64,000 nucleotides of DNA from IMGVR_UViG_3300034073_005389:248001-312000, one strand, 5' to 3'. Counted from the stretch's first letter, positions 45,484-60,305 are shown. Notes: generated by a model not told the origin, from the sequence alone. Numbers and translations: made by a program.

Positions 45484-46098
45484 TTACTCTGCGTTAAGTT
45501 TAAAGAAATCTACAATAGAGTGCATAATGATTCCGCTTGCAGTTCCTACGTTTAAACTTCTAACTGAACCATATTGCTCAATATATACCATTTTGTCACA
45601 TAATTTTTGCATAGTAGGCGTCAATCCTACTCCCTCTTCTCCAAAAATTAATAATGTGTTCTTCTCCCAATTATGTGAAGAAATGGAAACAGACCCAGCA
45701 ATATTATCCACACCCACAAACACATACTTATCTTTCAATGTAAGTAACTGTTCTATTGTAGCTATCCACTGAACATCACTATAATTATGAACGCCACAAG
45801 TGCCTCGACGATCAAATTTTTTATTCCCAACATAGAAAATTTCTCGTGCATTAAAAGCATTAGCATTCCTAATGATTGTTGCAAGATTAAAATCTCCAAT
45901 CACATTTTCACAAAGAATAGCATATGGAAACGCTGTCTCTGCTAACTTAGCCTTAATCTCTGCTGTTGTCAAGTGTTTAAAATGATCAACAACGTTATAA
46001 GTCCAAGATGCTAAATGCTCATTTTTATTAATTAAAGCTGCTTGATGCAAAGGCGCATCAAGCAGTAAATTAGGAGTTGTTGTATTTTTTTCCTTCAT
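45484..46098 (-). CDS. trmH: TrmH/SpoU RNA 2'-O-methyltransferase
   Basis: FNLATIIRNANAF, IFGEEGVGL and VRSLNVGTASGI. Confidence 0.92.
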   Translation of the reverse strand: MKEKNTTTPNLLLDAPLHQAALINKNEHLASWTYNVVDHFKHLTTAEIKAKLAETAFPYAILCENVIGDFNLATIIRNANAFNAREIFYVGNKKFDRRGTCGVHNYSDVQWIATIEQLLTLKDKYVFVGVDNIAGSVSISSHNWEKNTLLIFGEEGVGLTPTMQKLCDKMVYIEQYGSVRSLNVGTASGIIMHSIVDFFKLNAE

Positions 46099-46099
46099 A

Positions 46100-47650
46100 T
46101 TATTGAATTGACTTCATTGTCGGAAATAGAATTACATCTCTAATAGAAGCTGCATTAGTAAGCAACATAAACAATCGATCTAGTCCAATTCCAAATCCAA
46201 TGGCAGGTGGCATACCATACTGCAAAGCAGTTACATAGTCAGCATCAAAATCCATTGCATCCTTACTGTTATCTGCAAGCTGTTCCTTAAACCGGAGTTC
46301 TTGTTCCGTTGGATCATTCAACTCCTGAAAAGCATTGCACAATTCACGACCATCTACGAATAATTCAAATCGATCACAGAAAGATGAGTTACTATCCTTA
46401 GATCTTGCCAAAGGACAAATATCCTTTGGATAGTCAGTAATAAATACAGGAACAGAATACTTGTTATCCGAGGTACGATAATCCTGAGTTAAAAAAGGCT
46501 CAGCCATATATTCAAAGAAAGTACAAATAACTTGACCCATAGACTTAGCCTTAGTTACTTCTGACCACATCTCTTCCATATCAATCTTCCGATTTACATG
46601 ATGAGACAACTGCTCATAACTAACTCCAGACTTAGTAATATGAAGCTTTACCCCTAGCTTTTCAGCGGCATTATGCACCGCTTGAAGCATAGTAACCTGT
46701 ACTGGATTACTAAATGTAAATGTTCTATTTTCCTTCCACGCAAGATAAATTGGAAGAATGTTCTTTGGTAGATGCTTTTCTAAATACATTTCCACATGCG
46801 CAAACATGCTAGTAGTTCTTTCGATTAGCTTTGGAAAATTACCATAAGCCTCGTAGAACTCCATCATAGTAAACTCTGGATTATGTCGAGTAGATAATCC
46901 TTCATTTCTATAATTTCTACCAATCTCAAAAACCTTATCCATACCGCCTACCAGTAAACGCTTTAGATAAAGTTCTGGAGCAATACGCAGAAACAAATCC
47001 ATATCCAAGGCATTATGATGAGTAGTAAAAGGCTTTGCGTTAGCTCCGCTACTAACAGTATTAAGAGTGCTGGTTTCTACTTCTAAAAAACCTTCACGCT
47101 CCATGTAATCGCGGATTCCACGCAAAGCATAACTACGCACTACGAAAACTGCACGACTTTCTTCTGAAGAAAGAAGATCAAGATATCGTTGGCGATACTT
47201 AGTTTCGGTATCAGAAATACCAGCAAACTTTTCTGGCATTGGTCGGTGAGACTTAGTAAGTAGTCTCCAATTTAGAAGCAAAAGACTTTTTTCGCTAGTC
47301 TTACTGAGACAAAGCTTGCCTTCTACTTCGATAATATCACCAAGATCCATAAGGCGAATATTTTGGAAATCAGAACAAGCAGCCTTACTGATAATAAGCT
47401 GAATAGAGCCGGTACTATCATACATTGTTACAAATGCAATCGAACCTCCCTTTCTAAAAGTTTGGATACGACCACGAGTAACAACCGACTCTCCTAAATC
47501 ATCTGGATTAATAGAAATAGGAGTATTATCACTAAACTGACAAAGCAACGTTCCGATTTCAACTCCAGTGGAGTTAGCAAGTGGATAAGTTCCGCTATTT
47601 ACTTCTTCATGCTTAGAGATACGGGTACGAATTAAATCTTGTTCAGACAT
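46100..47650 (-). CDS. lysS: Lysyl-tRNA synthetase, class II
   Basis: OB anticodon domain, YRQRYLDL, LRIAPELYLKRL, FRN-type motif 2 (YRNEG...HNPEFTM) and motif 3 GFGIGLDRL. Confidence 0.96.
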   Translation of the reverse strand: MSEQDLIRTRISKHEEVNSGTYPLANSTGVEIGTLLCQFSDNTPISINPDDLGESVVTRGRIQTFRKGGSIAFVTMYDSTGSIQLIISKAACSDFQNIRLMDLGDIIEVEGKLCLSKTSEKSLLLLNWRLLTKSHRPMPEKFAGISDTETKYRQRYLDLLSSEESRAVFVVRSYALRGIRDYMEREGFLEVETSTLNTVSSGANAKPFTTHHNALDMDLFLRIAPELYLKRLLVGGMDKVFEIGRNYRNEGLSTRHNPEFTMMEFYEAYGNFPKLIERTTSMFAHVEMYLEKHLPKNILPIYLAWKENRTFTFSNPVQVTMLQAVHNAAEKLGVKLHITKSGVSYEQLSHHVNRKIDMEEMWSEVTKAKSMGQVICTFFEYMAEPFLTQDYRTSDNKYSVPVFITDYPKDICPLARSKDSNSSFCDRFELFVDGRELCNAFQELNDPTEQELRFKEQLADNSKDAMDFDADYVTALQYGMPPAIGFGIGLDRLFMLLTNAASIRDVILFPTMKSIQ

Positions 47651-47656
47651 ATTTCC

Positions 47657-47881
47657 TCAATTAATCATATTCTTATCGTCAGAAGAATCTTCACCACTAA
47701 GAATATCATTTACCGAATTATCAACAGTACGCAGCAAATCCTCAGCAGCATCCATTAAAAGGGTACTTAGACTTAAGCACTCAGCTGAATTAAGAACTCC
47801 AAGAGAAATAGTAACTTCCTCTGTCTCAAGGGAAACTTCAACTTGCTCATCTGCAATTTTATTAATGGTAATATTAATCAT
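47657..47881 (-). CDS. Small acidic hypothetical protein
   Basis: 74 aa within the operon. Confidence 0.55.
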   Translation of the reverse strand: MINITINKIADEQVEVSLETEEVTISLGVLNSAECLSLSTLLMDAAEDLLRTVDNSVNDILSGEDSSDDKNMIN

Positions 47882-47884
47882 AAT

Positions 47885-48283
47885 TTACACCGTGTAAACA
47901 CGGTCCTTATCTTGTTGTGGGAACCAGATTCCGTACTGATTATCGTTAATAGTATAATAAACTTTTTTAACTCGATGTGCTCGAATTTTCAATTGACAAT
48001 CTGGACAAGGACGAGCCATAGCGAGGGAACGATCCTTGCGCAAAACACGAGAAACAAAAATCACACCATCTTTGCCTAGCTTACGAAGCAAACGACTTTC
48101 GGCATGAGAATTAACATTTACATTGGACATTTGCACAGAAGAAGAAAAAGAAACGGCGCCATTTCTAGAAGAAACCATGACGCCATCTTTTCTAATTCCA
48201 ATTGCTCCCAACCAAAAACTGCGAAGATCCGCACTATTAGTGGGAAGTGCTAGTCCCGCCGCCTCCAACAGAAAATCCAGCAT
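47885..48283 (-). CDS. Zn-dependent cytidine-deaminase-fold protein
   Basis: HAE...PCPDC signature. Confidence 0.85.
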   Translation of the reverse strand: MLDFLLEAAGLALPTNSADLRSFWLGAIGIRKDGVMVSSRNGAVSFSSSVQMSNVNVNSHAESRLLRKLGKDGVIFVSRVLRKDRSLAMARPCPDCQLKIRAHRVKKVYYTINDNQYGIWFPQQDKDRVYTV

Positions 48284-48611
48284 CTACGACCTCACAAGTA
48301 CAATTGCACTCAGATAAACACATACCCTTAGCTTCTGAATAAAATCCACCACAACCACAGTCTGATAGTAATGTTGGTTGTTGACCTGTACAAACAAAGC
48401 AATCACTTGAACTTACTGGTGCTGTCGCAGACACAGATGCAGATGGAGCACTATGCGAAACTGCTGGAGCACCATGAGACATTACAGATGATAACTCTGC
48501 GCTAAGATGAGTGCTAGGTTTGTTAGTTCCACCACCTAGATTAGCGTCTTGTGATGTACATGAGATTACAAAAAATGTTAGTGTTGTTAGAAATTTTTTC
48601 ATTTTATTCAC
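48237..48611 (-). CDS. Cys-rich lipoprotein-like protein
   Basis: MKKFLTTLTFFVISC lipobox-like start; CFVC...CGC...C.C.C. Confidence 0.5.
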   Translation of the reverse strand: MNKMKKFLTTLTFFVISCTSQDANLGGGTNKPSTHLSAELSSVMSHGAPAVSHSAPSASVSATAPVSSSDCFVCTGQQPTLLSDCGCGGFYSEAKGMCLSECNCTCEVVDAGFSVGGGGTSTSH

Positions 48612-49209
48612 CTTTAAATTGTTTTAAAATTTGTTTACGAATTACTTTTGGAAACCCTGGATTCAATTCTAAATATTTTGGCAAGATTTCATGCCGAATC
48701 TTATTTCTCATATATTTAGTATCTTGATTACTAGGATCTTCAATCCAAGGAACTTGGTGTCGTAAGCACCAATTTACCATTTCACTTTTAAGATTAAGTA
48801 AAAATGGTCGAATAATCAAACCGTTAATATATGGAATTAATCTAGGCAATCCATGAGCAGAAGTAAAAATCCAATTTTCCATCTGATCATTTAAATTATG
48901 AGCCATCACCATAGGAAGCTGGAATTTCTTAAACCAATTATATCTTTGGTTTCTCCAATATTCTTCCCAAGACTCTTGTTTAGATTTATCGGAACATATT
49001 GTGCCAATTTCTAAATCAATTTTGTGCTGACTACAATAATCTTGAATAAATGTCTGAGCTAAAGCTCCGAACTCAGTACCATGATTAAAGTAACATACTT
49101 TGATTTCTCTTCCACCATTTTTAAGAAAATGTAGTGCCGCCATACTATCAGCACCACCAGAACAAGCCAAAGTAACTTGATATGGAATTTTATTTAGTAA
49201 TCGCAACAT
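48604..49209 (-). CDS. tilS: tRNA(Ile)-lysidine synthase, catalytic domain only
   Basis: ACSGGADSM, FNHG, RNQRY, AHNLNDQME, IIRPFL, WIEDPSN and MRNKIRHEILP. Confidence 0.93.
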   Translation of the reverse strand: MLRLLNKIPYQVTLACSGGADSMAALHFLKNGGREIKVCYFNHGTEFGALAQTFIQDYCSQHKIDLEIGTICSDKSKQESWEEYWRNQRYNWFKKFQLPMVMAHNLNDQMENWIFTSAHGLPRLIPYINGLIIRPFLLNLKSEMVNWCLRHQVPWIEDPSNQDTKYMRNKIRHEILPKYLELNPGFPKVIRKQILKQFKGE

Positions 49210-49216
49210 AATACGA

Positions 49217-50080
49217 ATGCACATATATCTGCATATATGTATGTCTGAAATTAAATGTAAATTTTGCGAAAAAATATTATTATCTAATATGTCTAGATCA
49301 ATACATCAATTAAGATGTAATCTTAATCCAGAATTTGACCCAAACAGATTTACAACACCATCTAGAAGAGGAAAGTATAAGTCAAACTCTCCATCTAAAA
49401 GCACATTAAAAAAACAAGAAAGTAAAACCCGACTAAAAAAACAATTAGATACAAAAAAATTTGTATGCCAATATTGTTGGCATGACATTACGACTTCAAC
49501 AAAACTGCCGCCTAAATTTTATTTTAAAGGCTTAAGGCTACATGAATCTATGTGCGGTAAAAATCCGCATGGGAAATCAGTAATGTATCCAACTAAACAT
49601 TCAGATAAAACTATCGAAAAATTAAAAGAGTCAGGTAAAAAAAGAGTTTGGACTCAGGAACAAAAAATAAAACTTAGTGAAAGTATGAAAAATGCTGTTA
49701 AAAAGCATCCGGAATCATACACAAATTCTAATAGAGGAAGGGTTAAACAAATAATATTTGATAATATCAAATTTCATGGTAAATGGGAAGTTGCTTTCTA
49801 TAAATGGTCAAAAGAAAACAATATTGAGATAAAAAAAAATATTGAAGGATTTAACTATTATTGGAGAGGTAATAGAACATATTTTCCTGATTTTTATCTT
49901 CCAAAATTAGAATTATTTATTGAAATAAAAGGATATGAAACATATCGAGACCAAGCAAAATGGTCTGCATTTCCTAAGAAACTTATAGTAATTAGAAAAG
50001 AACAAATTTTACAAATTAATAAAGGAATATTTCCTGGAATAGAAAGCATTCCTTTAACTAGTCCGACAAACAGGACTTGA
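49217..50080 (+). CDS. Free-standing PD-(D/E)xK endonuclease with zinc fingers and NUMOD3-like segment (start may be 49241)
   Basis: KWEVAF...YFPDFYL...FIEIKG; CxxC...HxxxC fingers; KHSDKTIEKL. Confidence 0.8.
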   Translation: MHIYLHICMSEIKCKFCEKILLSNMSRSIHQLRCNLNPEFDPNRFTTPSRRGKYKSNSPSKSTLKKQESKTRLKKQLDTKKFVCQYCWHDITTSTKLPPKFYFKGLRLHESMCGKNPHGKSVMYPTKHSDKTIEKLKESGKKRVWTQEQKIKLSESMKNAVKKHPESYTNSNRGRVKQIIFDNIKFHGKWEVAFYKWSKENNIEIKKNIEGFNYYWRGNRTYFPDFYLPKLELFIEIKGYETYRDQAKWSAFPKKLIVIRKEQILQINKGIFPGIESIPLTSPTNRT

Positions 50081-50373
50081 ACCTGTAACCACGCGATTAT
50101 GCTTACCACTACGATTTTCATCGCCTTTTTAAAGTTTGTGGTCTGGACTATACCTTCCCTCTCGGGTCTAACGTCTAGTCTCTACACCTTCTCAAATTTA
50201 TTGAGCTTGGCTCGGGATTAGCATATAAATTTCTTTACTTAGCTTTCCCCGAATTTGTCAGATTCTACCAAGATGTTTCACTTGGCAACCCACGATAGTA
50301 TATCATGAACATATATTGTTTTTAGATATACAATCTTCGAGTCGCATGCTCTAACCAATTGAGCTATTGTCGG
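50062..50373 (-). tRNA. trnI: tRNA-Ile2(CAU), intron-containing (exons 50340-50373 and 50062-50101), CCA not encoded
   Basis: Joined exons give CCGACAA/TTGTCGG, A73 and GCGACT|CATAATCGC, the anticodon arm I recall from E. coli ileX; lacks the initiator features; adjacent to tilS. Confidence 0.88.
50102..50339 (-). mobile_element. Group I intron (IC3-like, 238 nt) between tRNA positions 33 and 34
   Basis: AAAUUCGGGGAA, AAUCCCGAGC, GUGUAGAGACUA and UAUAGUCC; P1 GCGACU/GGUUGC; P3 UCUGAC/GUUAGA; P8 CCC-GAGA-GGG; terminal G. Confidence 0.92.
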
Positions 50374-50421
50374 ATAAACTTTATTTCATCATCTCGATTT
50401 CGACGCTTACCTTGCCCCTCA

Positions 50422-50454
50422 CTTATAGTCGGGCTGGTTGCCCGATGGGCAACC
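50422..50454 (-). promoter_or_regulatory. Palindromic box GGTTGCCCATCGGGCAACC-N8-TATAAG, copy 1 (upstream of tRNA-Ile2)
   Basis: Perfect 8-bp stem with 3-nt loop; same box and spacing as copy 2. Confidence 0.6.
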
Positions 50455-50461
50455 GCAAGCT

Positions 50462-51684
50462 TTAGCTATCGATTTGTTGTAGCTTTTCAAAAAACTTAAT
50501 CACATTCTCTCTAGACAACTTATATAGATTACCTCCAAAATCTTTGGTATCCATATAATAATTATACTGAACCATATCGGTTATATTCTTAACCGGTCTA
50601 TAATCTTTGTCAAGATTAAAAAGAAAACTAAAGTCTGGAGACTTTACTAAATTACGTGTCGTAAGGGCATATATCATACCCTCTCCTTGTTTTAAAGGAG
50701 AAAATTTTTCCACACCCATTAAAGAAACAAGATAATAATCTTGTTGTGCATTTTCTGGATTAGATGAATTATTATAATGAAATTCGGCAGGAGTCACCCA
50801 AGCCACATAATTTTTAAAATGTGTATGACCCAAACATAACATAAATAAATCTTTCTACTTCATCAAAATCAATAATTTTCTACTTGCTCAACAATTTCTA
50901 ATTCTTGAAAAAATTCCTGCTCTACAGGGCGACCTTGGTCAATTGGTTCAATTCCACAATCTGTAGGAATTGCAATCAGCACAACTTGATTATTAATCAC
51001 TACTTCTTTGTAGTCAACAGGACAGCCCAATTCTTTAGGTAAAGATGATGAAAAATCCTCGGCAGAATCTTGAACAGTATCCTGCTCCAACTCCTCTGAT
51101 TCTGGTAACTCTTGGAAGTTATAACAACCAGTTAATACCAAACAAAGAATAAAAAAATGTCTCATGACTAAATACCAATTAATTAGTTAACTTAACTAAT
51201 CTCCTTTATTATTTTTTAAAAATTCAGTAGCAGATTTATTAATACGCTCTTCTCTTTTATCTTCTTGCTCTCTATAATGATCTTTACATAGCGTCATGTA
51301 CCAACTACCAAGAACTCTATTCTCTCCAGGAACACCACAAGTTTCACAAATATGAAAACTCATATTCTCTGCCATAGAAATGGCTCCAGAAATATAATCA
51401 TTGGTGCAGCTAGTGTAAAACCTAAGACCACCAAATTTTTCTTTAACTTGAACCGCAGTAAATAAATCTAACAAACTCTTATTAGTTTTATGATCAAAAT
51501 CTTTATTTACTGGAGAATCTGGATTACTAACTCTCCACTCAATATGTTCAAGATGAGATTCAATTATTGAGCATAGATTATCTATTATCTTATACCAACC
51601 AGAACCACACTCTATGTGTGTTAGATTTTTAAACACTCTAGGATACTTTTCCAGTAAAGTAGAATACCAAACTTCTTTAGTCAT
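50462..51684 (-). other. Three hypothetical ORFs (126, 98 lipoprotein-like, 162 aa)
   Basis: The 162-aa ORF carries the common phage motif QVKEKFGGLRFY...CETCG. Confidence 0.7.
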
Positions 51685-51915
51685 AAAAGCTCTTCTTTGT
51701 GTTCAGTATGAGTATCATCACAATGCTTCTCATGACATTTATGAGAATATTTTGTATGATACCATGTATGAAGTTTCTTAAACCATATTCCAACAAAAGG
51801 AATAAGAGACATAATTAAAAATAATTCATCAGCACAAAAATGCATACTGGACTCCTCTTAAGAAATTTGCAACCGAGAATATATCACCTACATATATTTT
51901 AGATATTAAAAATAT

Positions 51916-51984
51916 ATTTATAACTTTGTTAAAGCGGCAAAACTAGTAAGTCTACCACTGTAGTACAGCAACAAAGTTATAAAT
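51916..51984. repeat. 15-bp perfect inverted repeat in an ORF-free region
   Basis: ATTTATAACTTTGTT (51916-51930) and AACAAAGTTATAAAT (51970-51984). Confidence 0.85.
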
Positions 51985-52239
51985 AATATTTTAAAGACTA
52001 CCTTCTAAGTGATAAATCTCTCGACAAAAAATGGGATATATTATAGGGAAGAGTAGTTCTTTTATGATCTAAGAAGATCTGATCAAGTAGAAGAAAATAA
52101 TATACAGTAAAATTAATACTATCTCCCAGAGTTTTTGGGAGAAGTTGACTTTCTCTTTAGAACTTCCATCAGGTGGATGGCAGGTAAAAGTCAATTAATA
52201 TCCTAATTATTAGGGTTATACTAATATAAGATATTATTA

Positions 52240-52755: not shown

Positions 52756-52817
52756 TATATTCTCCTTTTATGTTTGTTATGGTGGGAATATAATATATAA
52801 TTATGAATAGAAAATAG

Positions 52818-52890
52818 CTGAGGAAGAAGGATTCGAACCTTCAACTTACGGATTCAAAGTCCGTCATTCTGCCAATTGAATTATTCCTCA
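52818..52890 (-). tRNA. trnQ: tRNA-Gln(UUG)
   Basis: TGAGGAA/TTCCTCA stem, G73, ACGGA-CTTTGAA-TCCGT arm and GGTTCGAATCC. Confidence 0.93.
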
Positions 52891-53030: not shown

Positions 53031-53267
53031 TCACTCATCATCTTCTTCGTCCTCATCGCTATCAAAATCTTCTTCCTCTTCCTCTTCTTCATCATCATCT
53101 GATTCAAATTCTACTAACTCACCATCTTCATCTTGCATAAGACCAGTAAGAATAACTATTTGACCATCGTCGTCAGTTGTAAGTTCAAAACCATTTGGAA
53201 ATAGTTCTTCCAATGCTTCTTCTAAATCTTCAAGAGTCATCATATGTATCTCCTTATTATTAAGCAC
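53031..53267 (-). CDS. Highly acidic small protein
   Basis: Roughly half Asp/Glu. Confidence 0.65.
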   Translation of the reverse strand: MLNNKEIHMMTLEDLEEALEELFPNGFELTTDDDGQIVILTGLMQDEDGELVEFESDDDEEEEEEEDFDSDEDEEDDE

Positions 53268-53350
53268 TATTATAACAGTAGTTGTAAGATTTTTACTTTT
53301 TAAGTAAAAATTTTGGCGCTATGTGATTGAACGTGATCTCACACACAGCA

Positions 53351-53381
53351 ACCTGCTAACTATGGCAAATAGTTAGCAGGT
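53351..53381. repeat. 13-bp perfect inverted repeat (terminator or operator)
   Basis: ACCTGCTAACTAT-GGCAA-ATAGTTAGCAGGT; no U-tract. Confidence 0.7.
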
Positions 53382-53390
53382 GATTATCAT

Positions 53391-53729
53391 TCACTTCATA
53401 TGAACGCGAACTACTCCGCCACCGTGACCACGAACCACAGTAAACTGAGTTCCAAGAGAAGTTTGAGCCTTAATATAGCTATGAACCTGCTTGCTAATTG
53501 CTGGGAACAAAGCTGGATCTTTAGAGATTGCAGTAGATACAGTGTAAACCAGCATAGTAGTTGGGATAGCAGAAGCACTATTATCAAATACTGCGTGCAT
53601 AGCGCGCTCAATATCTGTAGCTGGAACCTCATTTCGTGAAACCCAATCAGTTAGTGCCTTAGTATAAGCGGCAACTGAAGCGTTTACGTCAACTGAACCA
53701 TCAACACCATGAACTGTGAACTTATCCAT
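53391..53729 (-). CDS. Winged-helix-like protein with RGxxGG wing (paralog 2)
   Basis: FTVVRGHGGGVV. Confidence 0.5.
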   Translation of the reverse strand: MDKFTVHGVDGSVDVNASVAAYTKALTDWVSRNEVPATDIERAMHAVFDNSASAIPTTMLVYTVSTAISKDPALFPAISKQVHSYIKAQTSLGTQFTVVRGHGGGVVRVHMK

Positions 53730-53805
53730 TTTTAATTATATCTCCAATTATTATAATACTACTCAAACAATCTAAAATAGAACTATTCTATTTTAGAAAA
53801 CTAAA

Positions 53806-54138
53806 TCAATCTTCTGATACTGATTCAGAATTTGGGGCTACTTGAACCTCTACCTTTTTAGTGGGCTTCTTACTAGCATTTGGATCAGGCTTAAGAATAC
53901 CACCATGAGCGCCACGCCTAACTAGTACACCAGGATATGACTCTAGCAAAAATCGAATTGTTGGATATAGTTGAGGACCAGTCATTCCGAATTCTGCACC
54001 TAACTCAGCGGCAAGGGCAGTTGCAGGGATTTTATCTCCTGGATTTAGAGCTTCAATTCTCTCAGATGCCTTAACAAAAATTTCACGAATCTTATTTAGA
54101 GAAGCCTCTACATGATCTACATTATGCATTTTATTCAC
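53806..54138 (-). CDS. Winged-helix-like protein with RGxxGG wing (paralog 3)
   Basis: IPATALAAELG...QLYPTIRFL...VRRGAHGGIL. Confidence 0.55.
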   Translation of the reverse strand: MNKMHNVDHVEASLNKIREIFVKASERIEALNPGDKIPATALAAELGAEFGMTGPQLYPTIRFLLESYPGVLVRRGAHGGILKPDPNASKKPTKKVEVQVAPNSESVSED

Positions 54139-54182
54139 TCCAATTTACTTTGTTACTAACTTGGTACAGGGTACCGCCTCTA

Positions 54183-54215
54183 CTTATAAAAACCTAGGTT
54201 GCCCGATGGGCAACC
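54183..54215 (-). promoter_or_regulatory. Palindromic box-N8-TATAAG, copy 2
   Basis: Identical 19-bp palindrome at 54197-54215; TATAAG at 54183-54188. Confidence 0.6.
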
Positions 54216-54241
54216 CATATAATTACTTTATCTACAATAAC

Positions 54242-54568
54242 TCAATTTCGAGTTAAACCATTTTGGCGAATCCAAAGTCGAGCAGCCTTAATTGCTCTAG
54301 TTGGTGCGTCTTTATAAGATACAATATCTTTCATTACCGCTTCTGAAATATCGTGCATAGTAGCTTCTCTATGCATGGAGATCTTTAGCGGTTCCTCCAA
54401 AAGACGACCAAGAGCAAGTTGTCGTGCTACTGCACGATTAAAACGATCTCTTGGATTTAAGACTGAAAGCTGATAAGTAGCTGTCCCACTACTACGGTTC
54501 ACTTGAATTGCAAGACAACCAACGGGATGACCATTTTCTGAACGAAGATACATAATACGACGTGACAT
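54242..54568 (-). CDS. Hypothetical protein
   Basis: 108 aa; NPRDRFNRAVARQLALGRL is a common phage motif. Confidence 0.65.
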   Translation of the reverse strand: MSRRIMYLRSENGHPVGCLAIQVNRSSGTATYQLSVLNPRDRFNRAVARQLALGRLLEEPLKISMHREATMHDISEAVMKDIVSYKDAPTRAIKAARLWIRQNGLTRN

Positions 54569-54642
54569 ATTTATTACTCCTTGTTAACTAAACTTGGTTT
54601 AATTAGGTATTGATATTAGACGATTAAGATAAGGATTAAGTT

Positions 54643-55344
54643 ATGAATAGAATAATTATTTGTGGAAAAGATTATAGCCTTGATTGCCCCACTTTAACTT
54701 GGAAAGATAAAGGCGGATTTAATGCTTATCCTTACAAAAAGTTTAATTTAAGAAACTTAAAATTAGAAGATTTAAAGAAACAATCTTCTTGTTTTGTATT
54801 GCACCATTCAGTTACTTATACTGCGGCTACTTGCCAAGCCGTTTTAGTAAGCAGGGGTTTATCCTGTACTTTTCTAATTGATGATAATGACGTAGATGGA
54901 TATGCTACATTATATCAAACTTTAGATGTAAAAGAAGGTGCTTGGTCACATGGCGAAATGAATAATTTTGGTGCCGGAGTAGAAATTTGTTATATGCCCC
55001 AAGCATGGGAAAATAAAAATTTGTACTCCGAAAGTAATAGAAAAAAATTTAATGTTCCAGAACACTTTGTAGTGGATGATACAGTTCAAGGAAGAACATT
55101 AAAAGTCTTTGCGCCTACTGAAGCTCAAATAAAAACTTTAAAATGTTTAATTAAAACAGTATGTTCTGCTCTTGATATTCCTATGATTTTTCCTAAAAAT
55201 CAGGAAGGAAATATTATTAAAAGTATTTTATCAGATCCTAAACAACATAAAGGATTACTGGGTCATTTTAATATTAGTAAACAAAAAAACGACCCAGCAG
55301 GTTTAGATTTAGATTATCTTGAAAAATTTTTAAATGAAGAATAG
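54643..55344 (+). CDS. N-acetylmuramoyl-L-alanine amidase (Amidase_2)
   Basis: FVLHHS, AWSHG, GVEIC and LLGHFNISKQKNDP. Confidence 0.85.
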   Translation: MNRIIICGKDYSLDCPTLTWKDKGGFNAYPYKKFNLRNLKLEDLKKQSSCFVLHHSVTYTAATCQAVLVSRGLSCTFLIDDNDVDGYATLYQTLDVKEGAWSHGEMNNFGAGVEICYMPQAWENKNLYSESNRKKFNVPEHFVVDDTVQGRTLKVFAPTEAQIKTLKCLIKTVCSALDIPMIFPKNQEGNIIKSILSDPKQHKGLLGHFNISKQKNDPAGLDLDYLEKFLNEE

Positions 55345-55377
55345 TTTTTTTATTTGGGGTTCGTTGCCTTACCCTCA

Positions 55378-55405
55378 CTTCTAGTGAGGCGAGATGACCG
55401 ATGGG
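55378..55405 (-). promoter_or_regulatory. Degenerate copy 3: CCCATCGG-N14-TAGAAG
   Basis: Same core and the same core-to-hexamer spacing as copies 1 and 2. Confidence 0.45.
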
Positions 55406-55424
55406 AACCCCTCCTTGAATCACG

Positions 55425-56504
55425 CTATTTATTTAAATTATAGCCTTCTCCAACTAATTTTAGTTGCATTCTAGAATTTAATTTTGGTTCAAATCTTTCT
55501 TTTGTAGTTTTAACTACAAAACCTTCTCTAATATGCTTGCCGCCTAAGGTAGTCAATCCTTCAGCATAAGGATACATCTGATCTTTGCCAAGCCATTTCC
55601 CACGATACAACTCAGGGACCATATCTAATTGTAGATCGTTAATAATCTCAACAAATTTATCATAATCTAAATATCTTCCTGTTTTACGATCCCAGATATC
55701 AAAAAATCTAATTCTTGACTGATACTTACCATTTACTGGTGTTGTATCGTACTTAAATCCTTTAACTAGTCCATATAGCTCTCCAAAGAAAACTAAATTA
55801 GGATATCTAGTTAATTTTTCTTCTAGATTATAACGGATAGCAATATCCCACCAAGAATCTCCACCATCTCTTCTTTTATAGAGATTTCTAGATTTTACCC
55901 AGAATTTTTCTCCATCAAAACAATAGGAAGAATTCGCCCCATGTATTTTTTCGTTAATTACTATTTCTTCGTCAGGAAGTAAGCAATTTGCATACTGTCT
56001 CAATCCAGATACATCATAAAATGGAATACTCCATCCTACAGGAGATTTTTCCGTTTTTCCTGGATTAAGTTTTGCTTGCTCAGTATGTTCTTCTTCATCT
56101 TCTTCCATCTTTTTAAGATTAAAGAATTCAACTACTGAATCCCCAACAGAAAAATTATATGGGGCAGGAACCAGCATTCCCTGACTATAAATATTTCTAA
56201 TTTTCTTTGCCTTGATAACTCTGTATTTATCGGGAACAGAACCTAAAGTATATTTAGTGCCAATTACTTTTACTTCTCCTGATTCTGTTTTTTGAGTAAG
56301 TTTTGGGCAAAGAAAATAAAATTGTTGAGTGTCAGGAACGATAGTATCAGTTGGAAAATAAGCCGCTACACTATTTACTTTAAATTCCCCAGTCTTAATT
56401 ATTACTGGATAATCTCCAAGTACAGTTGCTATTTCTAAATTATCAGCATTAGGATGCTTTTCTATTTTTTCAATAATTACTACCTGTGGATTCCATTCTG
56501 ACAT
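55425..56504 (-). CDS. RNA ligase (Rnl2-like, DRB0094/Rnl5 type)
   Basis: N-terminal IEKHPNADNLE OB-like domain; EKIHG, FGELYG, REGFVVK and LKLV. Confidence 0.9.
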   Translation of the reverse strand: MSEWNPQVVIIEKIEKHPNADNLEIATVLGDYPVIIKTGEFKVNSVAAYFPTDTIVPDTQQFYFLCPKLTQKTESGEVKVIGTKYTLGSVPDKYRVIKAKKIRNIYSQGMLVPAPYNFSVGDSVVEFFNLKKMEEDEEEHTEQAKLNPGKTEKSPVGWSIPFYDVSGLRQYANCLLPDEEIVINEKIHGANSSYCFDGEKFWVKSRNLYKRRDGGDSWWDIAIRYNLEEKLTRYPNLVFFGELYGLVKGFKYDTTPVNGKYQSRIRFFDIWDRKTGRYLDYDKFVEIINDLQLDMVPELYRGKWLGKDQMYPYAEGLTTLGGKHIREGFVVKTTKERFEPKLNSRMQLKLVGEGYNLNK

Positions 56505-56598
56505 AATAATCTCCTTTAAGACTTAAAACTAAATATGGTCAGAAGAATACTAATACCTAGTATTATTTGTAATTTAAAAAATATTATATCCATAATTT

Positions 56599-56859
56599 TT
56601 ACACAAACAAATCTAAACCATATTCAGTCAAGGTAATATACTCATCATATTTAGCTGTGCCACTTTTTAATTTATCTTTAAGATAAATTAAATGCTTACA
56701 AGTCTTGCTACCACGATGAATAAAAGAAGGACAATTACAAGACCACTTTACTCCCCTACCTCCTTCTTTTTTAGATTTGCCTGTCCTGCTAATTCTATAA
56801 GGAATATCTTTATTTTTATTACTAAAACTCCAAACTAAAGCTACAGTTTCTTGATCCAT
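56599..56859 (-). CDS. SWIM zinc-finger protein
   Basis: WSCNCPSF...CKH. Confidence 0.8.
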   Translation of the reverse strand: MDQETVALVWSFSNKNKDIPYRISRTGKSKKEGGRGVKWSCNCPSFIHRGSKTCKHLIYLKDKLKSGTAKYDEYITLTEYGLDLFV

Positions 56860-57806
56860 TAATTTTTAATATCCTTAAAAAATTGTAACAAATTTGTTTC
56901 GGAAAAGTTTTTACGCTCTGATGAAGTACTAGATACTGCAAAATTTTGCTCTACTGCATCCAAATACATAGTAAATGTTCCATCAGAACCCATATAAAAA
57001 GTATTCCATGCTTCAGATGTAAAATACCTTTTGGCATTTAATTGTTGCAAAGCAAGGTTATCAAAAGATAAAATAATGTTATTATATTTGAAATATTTAA
57101 CTAATTGAGTATACCACTCATATTTATTAGCTTCTACTTCTTTATTTTTTAAATAGTAATTTAAACCATTACCATATTTCTTATAGCCAAGAATTAATAC
57201 CTTGCACTCTTTATTATTTTGTTGACAAAGTTGATATAATTGATCAATGTCGTCAACATGATTAATTCCCATTATTACATGAAATACTAGATGATCAGTT
57301 AATGAAATAATAGGTTGAATATCGTTCAGATACTTCGAATCAGAATAAGAAATACCAATACCAAAAACTAAATTATCAGTAATTAATTTTTCAATTAAAG
57401 ACTGATAATTTTTAACATGTTTTTGATTAATAGTAATATTAGGAATTAATCCTTGTTTTCTAACATTTTGTAGGAAGCTAATTAGCTTAGGATGAGCTAA
57501 TGGATTACCTCCTCCAATTGCTATCTCTACACCAGCCGGTAGAACCGAAAGCTCTAATTCTAACCTCTCTAGGTCAGCATGTTTGCCTTTTAAATTAGAC
57601 TTTTCATGGCAAAATGCGCATATAGGATTATCTGATGTTGGTTCGCAATAATTAGTGATCTTTACATCTAAAGATGATGGAAAGTCTACTGTTAATAGTT
57701 CTTGAGAACTATATTCTCTTTCAAGAGAGCCATCTTCAAATAATGTAACAGTAGTATTTCCATTTTGATACTTATGAAGAATTTGGCTCATCTTTGATTT
57801 TATCAA
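56859..57806 (-). CDS. Radical SAM protein with CX8CX2C cluster motif
   Basis: ITNYCEPTSDNPICAFCHE; EIAIGGGNPLAHP; NITIN. Confidence 0.85.
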   Translation of the reverse strand: MIKSKMSQILHKYQNGNTTVTLFEDGSLEREYSSQELLTVDFPSSLDVKITNYCEPTSDNPICAFCHEKSNLKGKHADLERLELELSVLPAGVEIAIGGGNPLAHPKLISFLQNVRKQGLIPNITINQKHVKNYQSLIEKLITDNLVFGIGISYSDSKYLNDIQPIISLTDHLVFHVIMGINHVDDIDQLYQLCQQNNKECKVLILGYKKYGNGLNYYLKNKEVEANKYEWYTQLVKYFKYNNIILSFDNLALQQLNAKRYFTSEAWNTFYMGSDGTFTMYLDAVEQNFAVSSTSSERKNFSETNLLQFFKDIKN

Positions 57807-58569
57807 TAGTAAATTTAATATTTTCTATAGAATTTACTTTATAAGTGGGGATTTTATATCCAATAACAAAATCAGCATCATATAAAATACAAATGCCATG
57901 CTCTATTAAAGAGAAACTATTTAGCTCTTTGCCATCTAAATCTTTAGACTTATTAAAGTTTGGATCAAATATTCTATAGTTAGAATAACTAATATTTTGA
58001 TCAGATAACTTATAAGTCATAAGTTTAAGTGATTTTTTAATCTCTGATGTTTCAGGGTATCCTAAAAACTTTGTGACGAGATTTGTATTTTCTACTTTTA
58101 AGAAATGAGTATATTTACTTTCTGGATGATTATAAAATTCACAATCAGCATCTGAATTATCATTTCCAGTATACAGCCAGCAGCTTGGATTAAAAATCCA
58201 ATTTTTAAGAATTTCTTTAGATTGAAAGATTGTTTTTGCCTCACCATCTTCTGACCAAGAAGATTGGTGATCAATATTAGAATCTCTAAGATCCCAATAA
58301 ATATCTTTGGCTCCAGTTTGCTCTTTTAGCACTTCATTTAACATTTCCACTTCTTGTGGATGGTCTTGACAAAAGACGGCTGCATAATTTGCTTTTGTGG
58401 TAGCATCGTTATATTTTTCCCATTCCCAACCAAATAAGCCGCCAGTCAAAGTAATAATACCATTATCTGGTATAATAGAATCGTAAATGCCGCTAACATT
58501 GGACACAATGGAAACAGAATGAGTGCTAGATGAATTAGTTTCAAAAACTTTATTCCTAATATTTTTCAT
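57772..58569 (-). CDS. Uncharacterised FETNSSSTHS-family protein, radical SAM partner
   Basis: RNKVFETNSSSTHS, FGWEWE, IDHQS and LYTGNDN; overlaps the rSAM start. Confidence 0.75.
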   Translation of the reverse strand: MKNIRNKVFETNSSSTHSVSIVSNVSGIYDSIIPDNGIITLTGGLFGWEWEKYNDATTKANYAAVFCQDHPQEVEMLNEVLKEQTGAKDIYWDLRDSNIDHQSSWSEDGEAKTIFQSKEILKNWIFNPSCWLYTGNDNSDADCEFYNHPESKYTHFLKVENTNLVTKFLGYPETSEIKKSLKLMTYKLSDQNISYSNYRIFDPNFNKSKDLDGKELNSFSLIEHGICILYDADFVIGYKIPTYKVNSIENIKFTIDKIKDEPNSS

Positions 58570-58591
58570 ATGTTACCTAATAACAATTTAG

Positions 58592-58672
58592 TGGGAAGTG
58601 ATGAATTTGAACCACCGTAGTCTATGACAAAGCGTTTACAGCGCTCCCCCGTTAGCCACTTGGGTAACTTCC
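58592..58672 (-). tRNA. trnY: tRNA-Tyr(GUA)
   Basis: GGGAAGT/ACTTCCC stem, A73, AGCG-CTGTAAA-CGCT arm and long variable arm. Confidence 0.9.
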
Positions 58673-58869
58673 CGAATACAGCATATGCAAGCTGACATAT
58701 GCACTATATCTTTAAGGCATATATAGTTTGCCATTAAATCAATAATAATTCTGAGACCTAAAATTCATATACCGCTCTTGCTTTAAGAATTTAATCTCAT
58801 CTTCTAAAATTTTAATTTTTTTCTCTAGCTCTTCTATTTTAGCTAGTAAAATTTTTACATCTTCCAAAA

Positions 58870-59692
58870 CTAATTTACCATTTTTTTATCAGATACCAAA
58901 TGTTCTCCTATAGCATACCCAATATCTGTAAGTTGGTAATATACTGTACCATCTTTAATAAAAGAGCTAACCAAACCATTAGCTAGCATTTGCTCCATAG
59001 CAAGATGAAATTCAGTTAATGATAAATTTAAATCTTCAAAACAAAATGGAGATCGAGGACTCATTATATTCTCTTTCTATAATTTATTAAAAATTGTTTG
59101 TGATCGTTGCACAAAATTTGACCTGCTTTAATAAATAAAAAAGCATCTGCTTCAGACCAGCCTTTATAAATTAAAGCATCATGTATTGATTGTATTGATT
59201 CTCCAATCAATATAGCTTGAGACACTATTGATATGATCTCATCAGCACGATCAATGCTGCTCATGGTCTACAGGCGTAGCAAGTATGCTTTCCGTCATTT
59301 GCGTCAGCAACTGCAAATTGATTATAGTTATTACATTTACGGCAAATAGCTCCGCTTTTATTTAAATTAATTTTAATCTGAGAAGAATTAGAAATTGACA
59401 TTCCAATTGAATTAGGTTTACTAAGTTTTGTTGGGCAAATAATAAATCTCATTGTGTCTGAGAAATTCATCTCTAATACTGCTTGTTGATAATTTCCTGT
59501 AGAAATTAAATTTTGAATATTATTTGATACAATAGGATCTAATTTTAAAAAATCTACTTCATTACAGTAGATGGCACAAGCTTGCTGATATGCCTCTCTT
59601 TCAGAAGAATATATTGGGATAGGGGTAGATTCGTTTTTCCAAACAGAAAACCCCTCATCTTTATAACTGATCTTAATAAGATATTTATTCAT
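58870..59692 (-). other. Three small hypothetical ORFs
   Basis: Coupled ORFs; the last has a C-terminal CxxC...CxxC. Confidence 0.65.
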
Positions 59693-59848
59693 CTACTTTT
59701 CCTTTGGGGTAATACATATAACCTATGGCAGATAAATGTAAAATAATAAAAAAATAAAATAAATATTTTATATTATCATTGACAGTAAAAACTACCATGG
59801 CGCATGTAATCAAATTCATAATTAGCGCTGGTAACAAGTTTTCATATT

Positions 59849-60220
59849 TCACTTAAAAACTTCCCATGTTCCATTAGAAAATAAATAAAAATAATTCATA
59901 ACAGAATCAGGAATTTTTTGTTTCATTTCAGAAACTGAAGAATAATTTATAGTTTCATAGATATCGTCTCCTTCTCTTCTATCTCTAGGATAAGAGATTA
60001 CCCAATTAGGAGTAGGACTATGGAAAGAGTGCGGCTCACCAATTTCATGGTTAAGCTCAGAAATTGGTCCTATTTTTATTAAATCTAACACCTTATCTAA
60101 TTTTAGATAAGATTTTTCTAAAATTGATAAGTGGTGCTTAGGATATCCATCCCAATGACAATAAATGCCTTCAATAGAATTGTCTAATTTAATATAGCCA
60201 ATAAATGATCTGGTTGACAT
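59849..60220 (-). CDS. Conserved phage hypothetical protein
   Basis: MSTRSFIG...IYCHWDGYP family motif. Confidence 0.75.
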   Translation of the reverse strand: MSTRSFIGYIKLDNSIEGIYCHWDGYPKHHLSILEKSYLKLDKVLDLIKIGPISELNHEIGEPHSFHSPTPNWVISYPRDRREGDDIYETINYSSVSEMKQKIPDSVMNYFYLFSNGTWEVFK

Positions 60221-60233
60221 AACTTTCCTTTAG

Positions 60234-60305
60234 AGCAGGCGACAAGACTTGAACTTGCAACATTTCGGATGGAAACCGAAGGCTCTGCCATTGAGCTACG
60301 CCTGC
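60234..60305 (-). tRNA. trnG: tRNA-Gly(UCC)
   Basis: GCAGGCG/CGCCTGC stem, U73 and TTCGG-TTTCCAT-CCGAA arm. Confidence 0.92.

What the first reader, a model, noticed from the sequence alone, without database searches (positions are those of the whole stretch)
45484..60305. Translation kit matched to AT-rich codons
Seen: TrmH, LysRS and TilS, plus tRNAs reading AUA, CAA, GGA, AAY and UAY. Phage genes use ATA freely (three in the first 14 codons of ORF 32299). Known: these A/U-rich codons and Lys/Asn demand are low in GC-rich hosts. Inference: a coordinated decoding-supplement module that supplies charging and modifying enzymes as well as tRNAs.
Basis: partly seen in the sequence, partly recalled or inferred. 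Interest (0 to 1): 0.6.

Follow-up and report, generated by a model that had tools for sequence, protein, structure and literature searches.

The report
Phage translation kit with intron-split tRNAs
A 361-kb freshwater jumbo phage carries an operon of tRNA-handling enzymes plus tRNAs that match its own AT-rich codons, a known kind of kit; the unexpected part is that two of these tRNA genes are interrupted by self-splicing group I introns.

Summary
LysRS (46100-47650) and a TilS catalytic domain (48604-49224) pass curated cut-offs. The "TrmH" (45484-46098) is a SpoU-family methyltransferase whose nearest solved relatives are TrmH. tRNA-Gln(UUG), Tyr(GUA) and Gly(UCC) lie in range.

The AUA reader is a tRNA(CAU) at 50061-50373, split between U33 and C34 by a 238-nt group I intron, directly upstream of TilS. 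The Asn tRNA lies outside the range (3346-3621) and is also intron-split.

The enzymes form one tight minus-strand unit. It runs from a 37-nt promoter-like motif (50451) to a terminator-like hairpin (45378-45395). That motif occurs 47 times, one strand only, only in the right 63 kb, which holds nearly all the tRNAs.

The tRNA set fits phage codon usage: TTA RSCU 3.56 with four Leu(UAA) genes, AGA 3.55 with two Arg(UCU), and AAA is the top codon alongside LysRS. Random anticodon sets reach the observed shift with P about 0.001.

The "GC-rich host" premise is untested, because the host is unknown. Translation kits in huge phages are already known. tRNA(CAU)-TilS synteny recurs in other phage contigs. 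A 2014 review states that all phage group I introns then known lay in protein genes, and I found no later report of one in a phage tRNA gene.

The parts
50415..50451 (-). Promoter-like 37-nt motif (a CCCATCGG-N-CAAC core, then ACTATAAGTGAGGGG), 41 nt upstream of the tRNA(CAU) 5' end. It is the leftmost of 47 copies.
   Evidence: A PWM scan of the whole genome gave 47 hits, all on the minus strand and all between genome 298451 and 361468. There were none on the plus strand and none in the first 298 kb. Sequence read.
50340..50373 (-). tRNA(CAU) 5' exon, positions 1-33, ending at U33.
   Evidence: The joined exons fold as a canonical 75-nt cloverleaf (ARAGORN).
50102..50339 (-). Group I intron, 238 nt, inserted between U33 and C34. 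It ends in G.
   Evidence: RF00028 scores 52.1 bits against a gathering score of 50. The 5' exon end GCGACU can pair with the intron's GGUUGC, giving a U-G wobble at the splice site. The GUG just 5' of that can pair with the 3' exon's CAU (read). A homologous intron sits at the same site in L196 with compensatory changes.
50061..50101 (-). tRNA(CAU) 3' exon, starting at C34 (CAUAA...). No CCA is encoded.
   Evidence: The best E. coli matches are all annotated tRNA-Ile (ileX).
49217..50080 (+). Free-standing endonuclease gene (287 aa) on the opposite strand between the tRNA and TilS. It is a mobile insertion.
   Evidence: phrog_15137 endonuclease, 1.3e-20. Contigs from three other studies join 49196 to 50061 with 21 other letters in its place.
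48604..49224 (-). Short TilS (tRNA-Ile lysidine synthetase), N-terminal PP-loop domain only, 206 aa.
   Evidence: A family of about 200-aa relatives occurs in phage contigs.
48237..48611 (-). ORF of 124 aa, function unknown, within the unit.
   Evidence: No family hit.
47885..48283 (-). Cytidine/dCMP-deaminase-like ORF, 132 aa. Probably nucleotide metabolism.
   Evidence: PF00383 below cut-off. phrog_174 dCMP deaminase, 3.8e-7. Weak match to phage dCMP deaminase 4p9c.
47657..47881 (-). ORF of 74 aa, function unknown, within the unit.
   Evidence: No family hit.
46100..47650 (-). Class II lysyl-tRNA synthetase, full length (OB anticodon-binding domain plus catalytic core).
   Evidence: It is 45-51% identical to the best of 401 Pseudomonadota genomes.
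45484..46098 (-). SpoU/TrmH-family RNA 2'-O-methyltransferase, 204 aa.
45378..45395 (-). Terminator-like hairpin followed by a T-run, 89 nt after the methyltransferase stop codon.
   Evidence: sequence.
52817..52890 (-). tRNA-Gln(UUG).
   Evidence: 71.5 bits.
58591..58673 (-). tRNA-Tyr(GUA), with a long variable arm.
   Evidence: 45.7 bits.
60233..60305 (-). tRNA-Gly(UCC).
   Evidence: 64.7 bits.
3346..3621 (-). tRNA-Asn(GUU) split by a 199-nt group I intron (3387-3585) between U35 and U36. CCA is encoded. It lies outside the finding's range.
   Evidence: RF00028 scores 52.7 bits. P1 pairs GCUGU with GCAGC. The acceptor U1-A72 and G73 fit Asn (my own knowledge of E. coli tRNA-Asn).
55425..56504 (-). 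RNA ligase (DRB0094 type). A possible tRNA-repair function; its membership in the kit is uncertain.
   Evidence: PF09414, 2.3e-24. TIGR02306, 3.6e-26, below cut-off.
55371..55407 (-). Second copy of the promoter-like motif in the window. A third copy lies at 54176-54212.

Best explanation
The region is the left end of a 63-kb right arm of a 361-kb jumbo phage (33% GC). That arm carries nearly all of the phage's tRNA genes behind a repeated phage-specific promoter-like motif.

The core is one transcription unit, in this order: motif, intron-split tRNA-Ile2(CAU), short TilS, two small ORFs and a deaminase-like ORF, LysRS, SpoU/TrmH-like methyltransferase, terminator.

Proposed mechanism:
1. The pre-tRNA self-splices. 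It has a group I intron with U-1/omega-G boundaries.
2. Splicing creates the CUCAUAA anticodon loop.
3. The co-encoded TilS converts C34 to lysidine, so the tRNA is charged with Ile and reads AUA.
4. The other phage tRNAs supply the isoacceptors for the phage's dominant A-ending split-box codons and for its heavy Asn and Tyr use. These are Leu UAA x4, Leu CAA, Arg UCU x2, Gln UUG, Gly UCC, Asn GUU, Tyr GUA and a candidate Ile UAU.
5. LysRS raises charging capacity for host tRNA-Lys, which has to read AAA, the phage's commonest codon.
6. The methyltransferase 2'-O-methylates tRNA.

Shown here: gene identities, intron anatomy with covariation, operon-like layout, the match between tRNA set and codon usage, and recurrence of tRNA(CAU)-TilS synteny.

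Inferred: splicing, lysidine formation, the methyltransferase target, co-transcription, and above all that the kit compensates for a GC-richer host.
For: - Gene identities.
- Introns: both reach the RF00028 gathering score. The spliced exons give canonical cloverleaves.
- Covariation: 10 split viral tRNAs share a consensus fold in which 39 of 61 pairs have compensatory changes. This includes the acceptor stem formed across the intron.
- Ile2 identity: the 15-nt anticodon arm is identical to E. coli ileX, while metT differs. The 3' exon hits genes annotated tRNA-Ile. The initiator hallmarks are absent, namely three G-C pairs in the anticodon stem and a 1-72 mismatch (read from the sequence; the rule is my own knowledge).
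- tRNA(CAU) sits next to a short TilS in other contigs: L084/L085, L151, L196 and L164 and L215.
- Layout: gaps of 7 nt or less, or overlaps, between the six genes. Motif at 50451. Terminator-like hairpin.
- Codon usage: body GC3 is 0.20, TTA RSCU 3.56, AGA RSCU 3.55, AAA 66.8 per 1000. Codons cognate to phage tRNAs make up 274 per 1000. Permutation gives P about 0.001 and 0.03.
- Precedent: huge phages carry tRNAs, aaRS, tRNA-modifying enzymes and tmRNA (PMC7162821). PA5oct/MIJ3 carry this short TilS at 43% identity. Their GC content is described as drastically different from the host's (PMC6892783).
Against: - The host is unknown, so the central premise of a codon mismatch with a GC-rich host is untested.
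- No RNA data exist. No RNA run holds the sequence, so splicing and co-transcription are unproven.
- The TilS lacks the C-terminal tRNA-binding domains of cellular TilS, so its specificity is unknown.
- The methyltransferase is below every equivalog cut-off.
- No tRNA-Lys accompanies LysRS.
- The candidate tRNA-Ile(UAU) is called only by ARAGORN. Rfam did not list it at E <= 0.01.
- Gene calls for codon usage were crude: longest ORFs with greedy overlap removal.
Confidence: 0.7

Rival explanations
1. Counter-defence or replacement kit. The phage tRNAs, the RNA ligase and the synthetase replace or repair host tRNAs that are cleaved by anticodon nucleases, or depleted after host shut-off. Codon matching would then be a by-product, because any replacement must serve phage codons.
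For: An RNA ligase lies among the tRNA genes. [quoted passage not shown] A phage tRNA-Tyr locus counters Septu cleavage of tRNA-Tyr (PMC13096335 abstract). Tyr and Asn tRNAs read both codons of their boxes, so they are not isoacceptor-specific supplements.
Against: tRNA copy number tracks codon bias: Leu UAA x4 and Arg UCU x2 for the two codons with RSCU about 3.5. TilS and LysRS are not repair enzymes. No tRNA-Lys is present, although tRNA-Lys is the classical nuclease target (my own knowledge). No defence system can be named because the host is unknown.
Confidence: 0.2
2. General capacity boost without any host mismatch. The host is itself AT-rich, and the kit simply raises supply for a very large burst of phage protein.
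For: Short-TilS phage contigs span 31-46% GC. A 63% GC huge-phage locus also carries many tRNAs (L133). So tRNA arsenals occur regardless of composition.
Against: The set is confined to A-ending split-box isoacceptors plus Asn and Tyr. It is not a broad sample. The closest isolates with this TilS infect a host whose GC content the MIJ3 authors call drastically different from the phage's.
Confidence: 0.2
3. Largely selfish cargo. The tRNA genes persist as landing pads for introns and homing endonucleases and have little translational role.
For: Two introns and a polymorphic endonuclease gene sit at these tRNAs. The tRNA-intron segment is nearly identical between otherwise diverged populations: 1 of 477 differences against 100 of 584 in the TilS segment of the same X10 contig. 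That pattern fits recent spread.
Against: The exons keep perfect cloverleaves with compensatory changes across lineages. tRNA(CAU)-TilS synteny is kept at 44-60% TilS identity, with and without an intron.
Confidence: 0.05

Closest known systems
Translation repertoires of huge phages (Al-Shayeb et al. 2020, PMC7162821)
   Same: A phage genome over 200 kb with tRNAs, an aminoacyl-tRNA synthetase, tRNA-modifying enzymes, an RNA ligase and a tmRNA.
   Different: That paper does not contain the words intron, lysidine or codon usage. Here the tRNA(CAU)-TilS pair, the intron-split tRNAs and the shared promoter-like motif are described.
Pseudomonas jumbo phages PA5oct and MIJ3 (Arenbergviridae; PMC6892783)
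   Same: A short TilS of about 200 aa, 43% identical over 96% of the query. It lies in a terminal region of small ORFs near tRNA genes. The authors say the phage's GC content differs drastically from its host's.
   Different: No LysRS match came from these records: the tblastn listing names one unrelated Pseudomonas phage record (Y1). The annotated stretch shows no tRNA(CAU) next to TilS. No tRNA introns are reported. Overall relatedness of the genomes was not tested.
Bacterial group I introns in tRNA anticodon loops: Leu.3Ug, Arg.5Ug, fMet.2Ug, Ile2.5Ug and 17 newer types (Williams 2020, bioRxiv 10.1101/2020.01.27.920355)
   Same: A group I ribozyme with U-1 and omega-G inside the anticodon loop. 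The U33|C34 site equals the '2Ug' position known for cyanobacterial tRNA-fMet. The Azoarcus-type Ile2 intron also sits in a CAU tRNA.
   Different: Here the 2Ug site is in an Ile2-like elongator tRNA, and a 4Ug site is in tRNA-Asn. Both are in a phage genome. A 2014 review states that all phage group I introns then known lay in protein genes (PMC3984707).
Cellular TilS (E. coli MesJ 1ni5, A. aeolicus 1wy5, G. kaustophilus 3a2k)
   Same: The N-terminal PP-loop catalytic domain, with SGGxDS conserved.
   Different: It lacks all C-terminal domains: 206 aa against 317-464 aa. In cellular enzymes these domains contact the tRNA body (my own knowledge).
Free-standing homing endonucleases beside introns in T4-like phages
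   Same: An endonuclease gene adjacent to an intron-bearing gene, variably present among related phages.
   Different: It lies outside the intron, on the opposite strand, between a tRNA gene and TilS. Its target is unknown.

Membership tests
TilS (tRNA-Ile lysidine synthetase) | N-terminal PP-loop ATP-pyrophosphatase domain with the SGGxDS motif | tested here: met
   TIGR02432 scores 120.8 bits against a cut-off of 93.6. PF01171, 1.4e-33. The motif ACSGGADS aligns to E. coli TilS.
TilS (tRNA-Ile lysidine synthetase) | C-terminal tRNA-binding domain(s) of cellular TilS | tested here: not met
   It is 206 aa and aligns only to residues 13-208 of the 433-aa chain. The full-length model NF007942 scores 67.6 against 606. 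It is a short, phage-typical form.
TilS (tRNA-Ile lysidine synthetase) | A cognate tRNA-Ile2(CAU) substrate | tested here: met
   A split tRNA(CAU) lies directly upstream, with an ileX-identical anticodon arm. The synteny recurs.
TilS (tRNA-Ile lysidine synthetase) | Lysidine formation at C34 | not testable with these tools
   Needs mass spectrometry or an enzyme assay.
Class II lysyl-tRNA synthetase | OB anticodon-binding domain plus class II core, scoring above the equivalog cut-off | tested here: met
   PF01336 and PF00152. NF001756 scores 507 against 468, and TIGR00499 scores 493 against 427.6, over residues 13-514.
TrmH (tRNA Gm18 2'-O-methyltransferase) | SPOUT/SpoU methylase domain | tested here: met
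   PF00588, 5.2e-23.
TrmH (tRNA Gm18 2'-O-methyltransferase) | Score above the TrmH equivalog cut-off, meaning specific family membership | tested here: not met
   NF008295 scores 42.2 against 227. The RlmB model scores slightly higher, 51 against 160. The nearest solved chains are TrmH, so the assignment is inconclusive between tRNA and rRNA targets.
Group I intron in a tRNA anticodon loop | Catalytic core matching RF00028 at the gathering score | tested here: met
   52.1 bits and 52.7 bits, against a gathering score of 50.
Group I intron in a tRNA anticodon loop | U at -1 in a wobble pair in P1, G at the intron's last position, and exons that join into a canonical tRNA | tested here: met
   Boundaries read. 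In each gene only one register satisfies both rules. ARAGORN folds both joined products.
Group I intron in a tRNA anticodon loop | Structure kept by compensatory changes among relatives | tested here: met
   39 of 61 consensus pairs have double changes in 10 sequences. The sequences were picked by a conserved core pattern, which favours the core helices.
Group I intron in a tRNA anticodon loop | Self-splicing activity | not testable with these tools
   No RNA run holds the locus.
Huge-phage translation kit | A phage genome over 200 kb with tRNAs, aaRS, tRNA-modifying enzymes and tmRNA | tested here: met
   A 361,490-bp record estimated 97% complete. Virion structural and tail sheath PHROGs. 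A tmRNA and 13 tRNA genes.
Codon-compensation module for a GC-rich host | tRNA set enriched for phage-preferred codons | tested here: met
Codon-compensation module for a GC-rich host | Host codon usage differs from the phage's | not testable with these tools
   The host was not identified.

The most novel reading that the evidence does not exclude
The genome is written in two codon regimes. The rightmost 13.5 kb holds small genes with GC3 of 0.58-0.67. The remaining bulk has GC3 of 0.20.

The same 47-copy promoter-like motif drives the GC-rich genes, the tRNA genes and the TilS-LysRS-methyltransferase unit. If this motif marks the first genes expressed, the phage would first translate host-like GC-rich genes with the unaided host tRNA pool. 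At the same time it would install its own decoding kit, which then permits translation of the AT-rich bulk.

The intron at U33|C34 would add a maturation step before C34 is exposed to TilS or MetRS.
Probability: 0.2. Interest if true: 0.75.

Novelty: new variant of a known kind. Interest (0 to 1): 0.5.

Why it matters
Translation kits in huge phages are established, so the kit itself adds one more example. It does come with an unusually clean match between tRNA copy number and codon bias.

What adds value:
1. [quoted passage not shown] A 2014 review says all phage group I introns then known lay in protein genes. At least 15 split tRNAs turned up among 117 IMG/VR loci carrying this intron core, including contigs of 298 kb and 543 kb. 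Standard tRNA scans miss such genes, so phage tRNA inventories are probably undercounted.
2. A recurrent substrate-enzyme pair, tRNA(CAU) next to a minimal TilS. This offers a natural system for asking how a TilS without tRNA-body-binding domains chooses its substrate.
3. A one-strand, 47-copy promoter-like motif and a sharp GC3 split. Together these make the temporal logic of decoding supplementation directly testable.

Tried and rejected
Searches that found nothing useful:
- Megablast of the region and of the GC-rich tail against isolate phages: no match.
- Single-protein search for TilS relatives in viral contigs: none confirmed. The word-based protein search then found the family.
- Terminal repeats, or nucleotide paralogy between the tail and the body: none.
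- T7-like RNA polymerase (PF00940), as a reader of the motif: no hit, but the control did not ring either, so this is uninformative.
- Terminase_6C: no hit, although the control rang. Gp23: no hit and the control did not ring. Phage identity rests instead on PHROG virion and sheath hits and the completeness estimate in the record.
- The 305-aa opposite-strand ORF at the same tRNA-TilS spacer in L215: no family hit.

GC-rich tail (genome 348-361.5 kb):
- Ribosomal RNA: rejected, no rRNA found.
- Host flank of a provirus: rejected as the best reading. The tail carries 29 copies of the same motif found in the AT-rich arm. A paralogue pair also straddles the boundary.
- Recovering a longer source contig from metagenome contigs: no match.

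Host identification:
- The MYG1-like gene in the tail is at most 47% identical to any species-representative genome, and the taxa are mixed.
- LysRS is 45-51% identical to the best of 401 Pseudomonadota, about 43% to one Clostridia genome, and lower or fragmented elsewhere. This gives no host signal.
- Shine-Dalgarno-like motifs precede 43% of crude gene starts, against a 9% background. The tmRNA tag is ANDNAFAPMALAA. Both are weak hints only.

Functions not assigned:
- Deaminase-like ORF as a tRNA deaminase: not supported.
- Radical SAM ORF 56859-57806 as a tRNA modifier: it belongs to a phage-only family of unknown function.

Corrected calls:
- ARAGORN's intron-mode labels, Leu(caa) and Thr(tgt), were rejected in favour of CAU and GUU. 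Only those registers give U-1 and omega-G together with a 7-nt loop.

Full report
CONTEXT. The window is bases 248001-312000 of a 361,490-bp virus record. IMG/VR classes it as 'provirus' and it is estimated 97% complete. Overall GC is 33%. Large ORFs hit a PHROG virion structural protein (2e-106) and, weakly, a tail sheath. In my crude gene calls, 396 of 454 genes lie on the minus strand. Near-identical DNA occurs in subsurface, freshwater and lake metagenomes from several studies. No RNA run holds it. No isolate phage matches at the DNA level.

OBSERVATION.
- LysRS (46100-47650, minus strand) passes two curated cut-offs over its full length.
- TilS (48604-49224) passes the cut-off for the N-terminal lysidine-synthetase domain and has the SGGxDS PP-loop. 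It is only 206 aa and aligns only to residues 13-208 of E. coli TilS.
- The 'TrmH' (45484-46098) has a clear SpoU domain but is far below every equivalog cut-off. Its nearest solved relatives are two TrmH Gm18 methyltransferases.

tRNA-Gln(UUG), Gly(UCC) and Tyr(GUA) lie in the range. The ATA-rich start of ORF 32299 is as described.

The AUA reader is an intron-split tRNA(CAU). The Asn tRNA is at 3346-3621, far outside the range, and is also split.

THE SPLIT tRNAs. Rfam places a group I intron at 50120-50314 (52.1 bits). ARAGORN in intron mode finds tRNA halves around it, and around a second site at 3346-3621. A focused Rfam scan scores that second site at 52.7 bits.

I applied the two boundary rules used for bacterial tRNA introns, U before the 5' splice site and G as the last intron base (bioRxiv 10.1101/2020.01.27.920355). 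Only one register works in each gene.
- tRNA(CAU): 5' exon 50373-50340, intron 50339-50102 (238 nt), 3' exon 50101-50061. This gives the loop CU|CAUAA.
- tRNA-Asn: 5' exon 3621-3586, intron 3585-3387 (199 nt), 3' exon 3386-3346. This gives the loop CUGU|UAA.

Both joined products fold as canonical cloverleaves. In each intron a short guide sequence can pair with the end of the 5' exon, with a U-G wobble at the splice site. The pairs are GCGACU with GGUUGC, and GCUGU with GCAGC (read).

The two introns share 74% of aligned columns. In 15 of these loci the core lies inside a split tRNA call. They include Leu(UAA), Arg(UCU), Lys(CUU), Asn(GUU) on contigs of 298 kb and 543 kb, and CAU tRNAs.

RNAalifold on ten such precursors gives 61 consensus pairs, 39 of them with compensatory changes. 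These include the acceptor stem formed across the intron. That set was chosen by a conserved core pattern, which biases it toward conservation of the core.

Only the 3' exon was searched, by reference. Joined sequences were used only inside my own scripts.

IS THE CAU tRNA AN Ile2? Several lines point that way.
- Across 5,423 E. coli genomes the best matches to the 3' exon lie under genes annotated tRNA-Ile. One I inspected is ileX, next to rpoD and mug. E-values are weak because the query is only 41 nt.
- The 15-nt anticodon arm GCGACUCAUAAUCGC is identical to ileX, whereas metT differs throughout the stem.
- The tRNA lacks the initiator features (three G-C pairs in the anticodon stem, an unpaired 1-72). 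That rule is from my own knowledge.
- A tRNA(CAU) lies just upstream of a short TilS in unrelated phage contigs:
  - L084/L085: TilS 52% identical, tRNA about 420 nt upstream.
  - L151: 44% identical, 26 nt upstream.
  - L215: 60% identical.
  - L196: 46% identical. Here the tRNA carries a homologous intron at the same U33|C34 site, 147 nt upstream of TilS.
  - L164: 41% identical. Here a CAU tRNA appears split after U36.

I take Ile2 as likely, not proven.

THE UNIT. From tRNA(CAU) down to the methyltransferase, all genes lie on the minus strand with gaps of 7 nt or less, or overlaps. A terminator-like hairpin follows at 45395-45378.

Forty-one nucleotides upstream of the tRNA lies a 37-nt motif. 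A position-weight scan finds it 47 times in the genome. Every copy is on the minus strand and lies between genome 298,451 (this copy) and 361,468. There are none on the plus strand and none in the first 298 kb. One copy sits 61 nt before tRNA-Leu(CAA).

That arm holds every tRNA except Asn. I call the motif promoter-like from its position only. No polymerase was identified (one search was uninformative).

CODON USAGE. From 316 long ORFs outside the tail, GC3 is 0.20. TTA has RSCU 3.56 (four Leu-UAA genes) and AGA has RSCU 3.55 (two Arg-UCU genes). CAA, GGA and ATA are all common, and AAA is the commonest codon.

Codons cognate to the eight phage anticodon species make up 274 per 1000. Against 45 possible anticodons, random sets of eight reach the observed body frequency with P about 0.03. 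They reach the observed shift, relative to the phage's own GC-rich gene set, with P about 0.001.

The largest shift of all belongs to Lys-UUU, for which the phage carries the synthetase rather than a tRNA. The A-ending isoacceptors supplied (Leu UUA, Arg AGA, Ile AUA, Gln CAA, Gly GGA) belong to families in which bacteria keep separate tRNAs for the A-ending codon. The abundance of those tRNAs follows genome GC (established knowledge, not tested here).

HOST. The other test cannot be run. The last 13.5 kb of the record has 50-60% GC and at first looked like host flank. It is not rRNA. It carries 29 copies of the same motif, and a small-protein family straddles the boundary. Its genes have Shine-Dalgarno sites and GC3 of 0.58-0.67. 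I therefore read it as part of the phage.

Its MYG1-like gene and the LysRS gave no host signal. The best indirect support for a GC-rich host is by analogy. The closest isolates with this short TilS are PA5oct and MIJ3. Their authors stress a GC content drastically different from that of Pseudomonas aeruginosa.

POPULATION DATA. I laid contigs from four other studies on 48000-52000 (4,001 letters, within the operators' limit).
- Three studies join 49196 to 50061 with 21 other letters between. The 287-aa plus-strand endonuclease gene (phrog_15137) is therefore an insertion that is absent elsewhere.
- All four carry the intron-bearing tRNA, with 0-1 differences over 190-477 nt.
- One X10 contig differs at 100 of 584 positions in TilS but at 1 of 477 across the tRNA, the intron and the upstream spacer. 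This suggests recent exchange of that segment.
- In L215, a different opposite-strand ORF occupies the same spacer.

COMPARISON AND VERDICT. tRNAs, synthetases, tRNA-modifying enzymes, tRNA ligases and tmRNAs in huge phages are established (PMC7162821). Phage TilS was reported in MIJ3 (PMC6892783). The kit as such is a new member of a known kind.

[quoted passage not shown] However, a review states that all phage introns observed to that date lay in protein-coding genes (PMC3984707). My four further literature searches found no later report of a phage tRNA intron. That is absence in one library, not proof of absence.

The rival readings cannot be excluded without a host and RNA data. They are counter-defence replacement, a general capacity boost, and selfish cargo.

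Noticed in passing
window 3346-3621 (-): A second intron-split tRNA, Asn(GUU), with a 199-nt group I intron between U35 and U36. It is missed by default tRNA scans and by the whole-window Rfam scan. The same tRNA and insertion site occur on IMG/VR contigs of 298 kb (L133) and 543 kb (L144).
   Followed up: yes
genome 298451-361468 (window copies at 50451, 54212, 55407): A 37-nt motif (consensus CACCCATCGGTCAACyTGCAyAACTATAGGTGAG) occurs 47 times. Every copy is on the minus strand and in the right 63 kb. In the last 13 kb it is spaced about every 350 bp. Some copies form a hairpin (GGTTGCCC-ATC-GGGCAACC). The polymerase or factor that reads it is unknown.
   Followed up: partly
L001 6500-19991 (genome about 348000-361490): A GC-rich tail (50-60% GC, GC3 0.58-0.67) of small motif-preceded genes in a phage that is otherwise 33% GC. 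It includes a MYG1/UPF0160-like exonuclease gene (L001 13031-13891). Two intrinsic-terminator-like hairpins and a 500-nt G+T-rich spacer mark the boundary (L001 about 5900-6560).
   Followed up: partly
window 49217-50080 (+): The endonuclease gene between tRNA(CAU) and TilS is absent in contigs from three other studies (21 nt in its place) and overlaps the TilS start. In L215 a different 305-aa opposite-strand ORF sits in the same spacer.
   Followed up: partly
window 50055-50531 against 48629-49212: In one lake-metagenome contig the tRNA-intron-spacer segment differs at 1 of 477 positions. The TilS segment of the same contig differs at 100 of 584. This looks like a recent recombination or homing tract.
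   Followed up: no
window 15164-19839 (-): Three adjacent genes match PHROGs annotated in Thermus phages as serine kinase (PrkA/YeaG-like, 643 aa), an unknown (441 aa), and a SpoVR/sporulation-protein-like family (401 aa). This resembles a yeaG-yeaH-ycgB-type trio in a phage.
   Followed up: partly
genome 207749-208102 (-), outside the window: A tmRNA gene with tag peptide ANDNAFAPMALAA.
   Followed up: no
genome 103937-104069 (-), outside the window: A weak group I intron-like match (25.6 bits, below the gathering score). The gene it might interrupt was not examined.
   Followed up: no
genome 338597-338672 (-) = L003 7597-7672: A candidate tRNA-Ile(UAU) with an odd D-arm. ARAGORN calls it, but Rfam does not list it at E <= 0.01. 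If real, the phage has two routes to read AUA.
   Followed up: partly
genome 321276-343475 (-): Four non-identical tRNA-Leu(UAA) genes, one Leu(CAA) and two Arg(UCU) genes are scattered singly among small ORFs rather than clustered. The second Arg gene has an atypical 85-nt form.
   Followed up: no
window 55425-58569 (-): A DRB0094-type RNA ligase, a phage-only radical SAM family protein (315 aa), and an overlapping 265-aa ORF lie between tRNA genes. Their functions are unresolved.
   Followed up: partly
window 20064-21554 (+): A 496-aa HNH/endonuclease-family ORF on the minority strand with repeated domains. It is another likely mobile nuclease.
   Followed up: no
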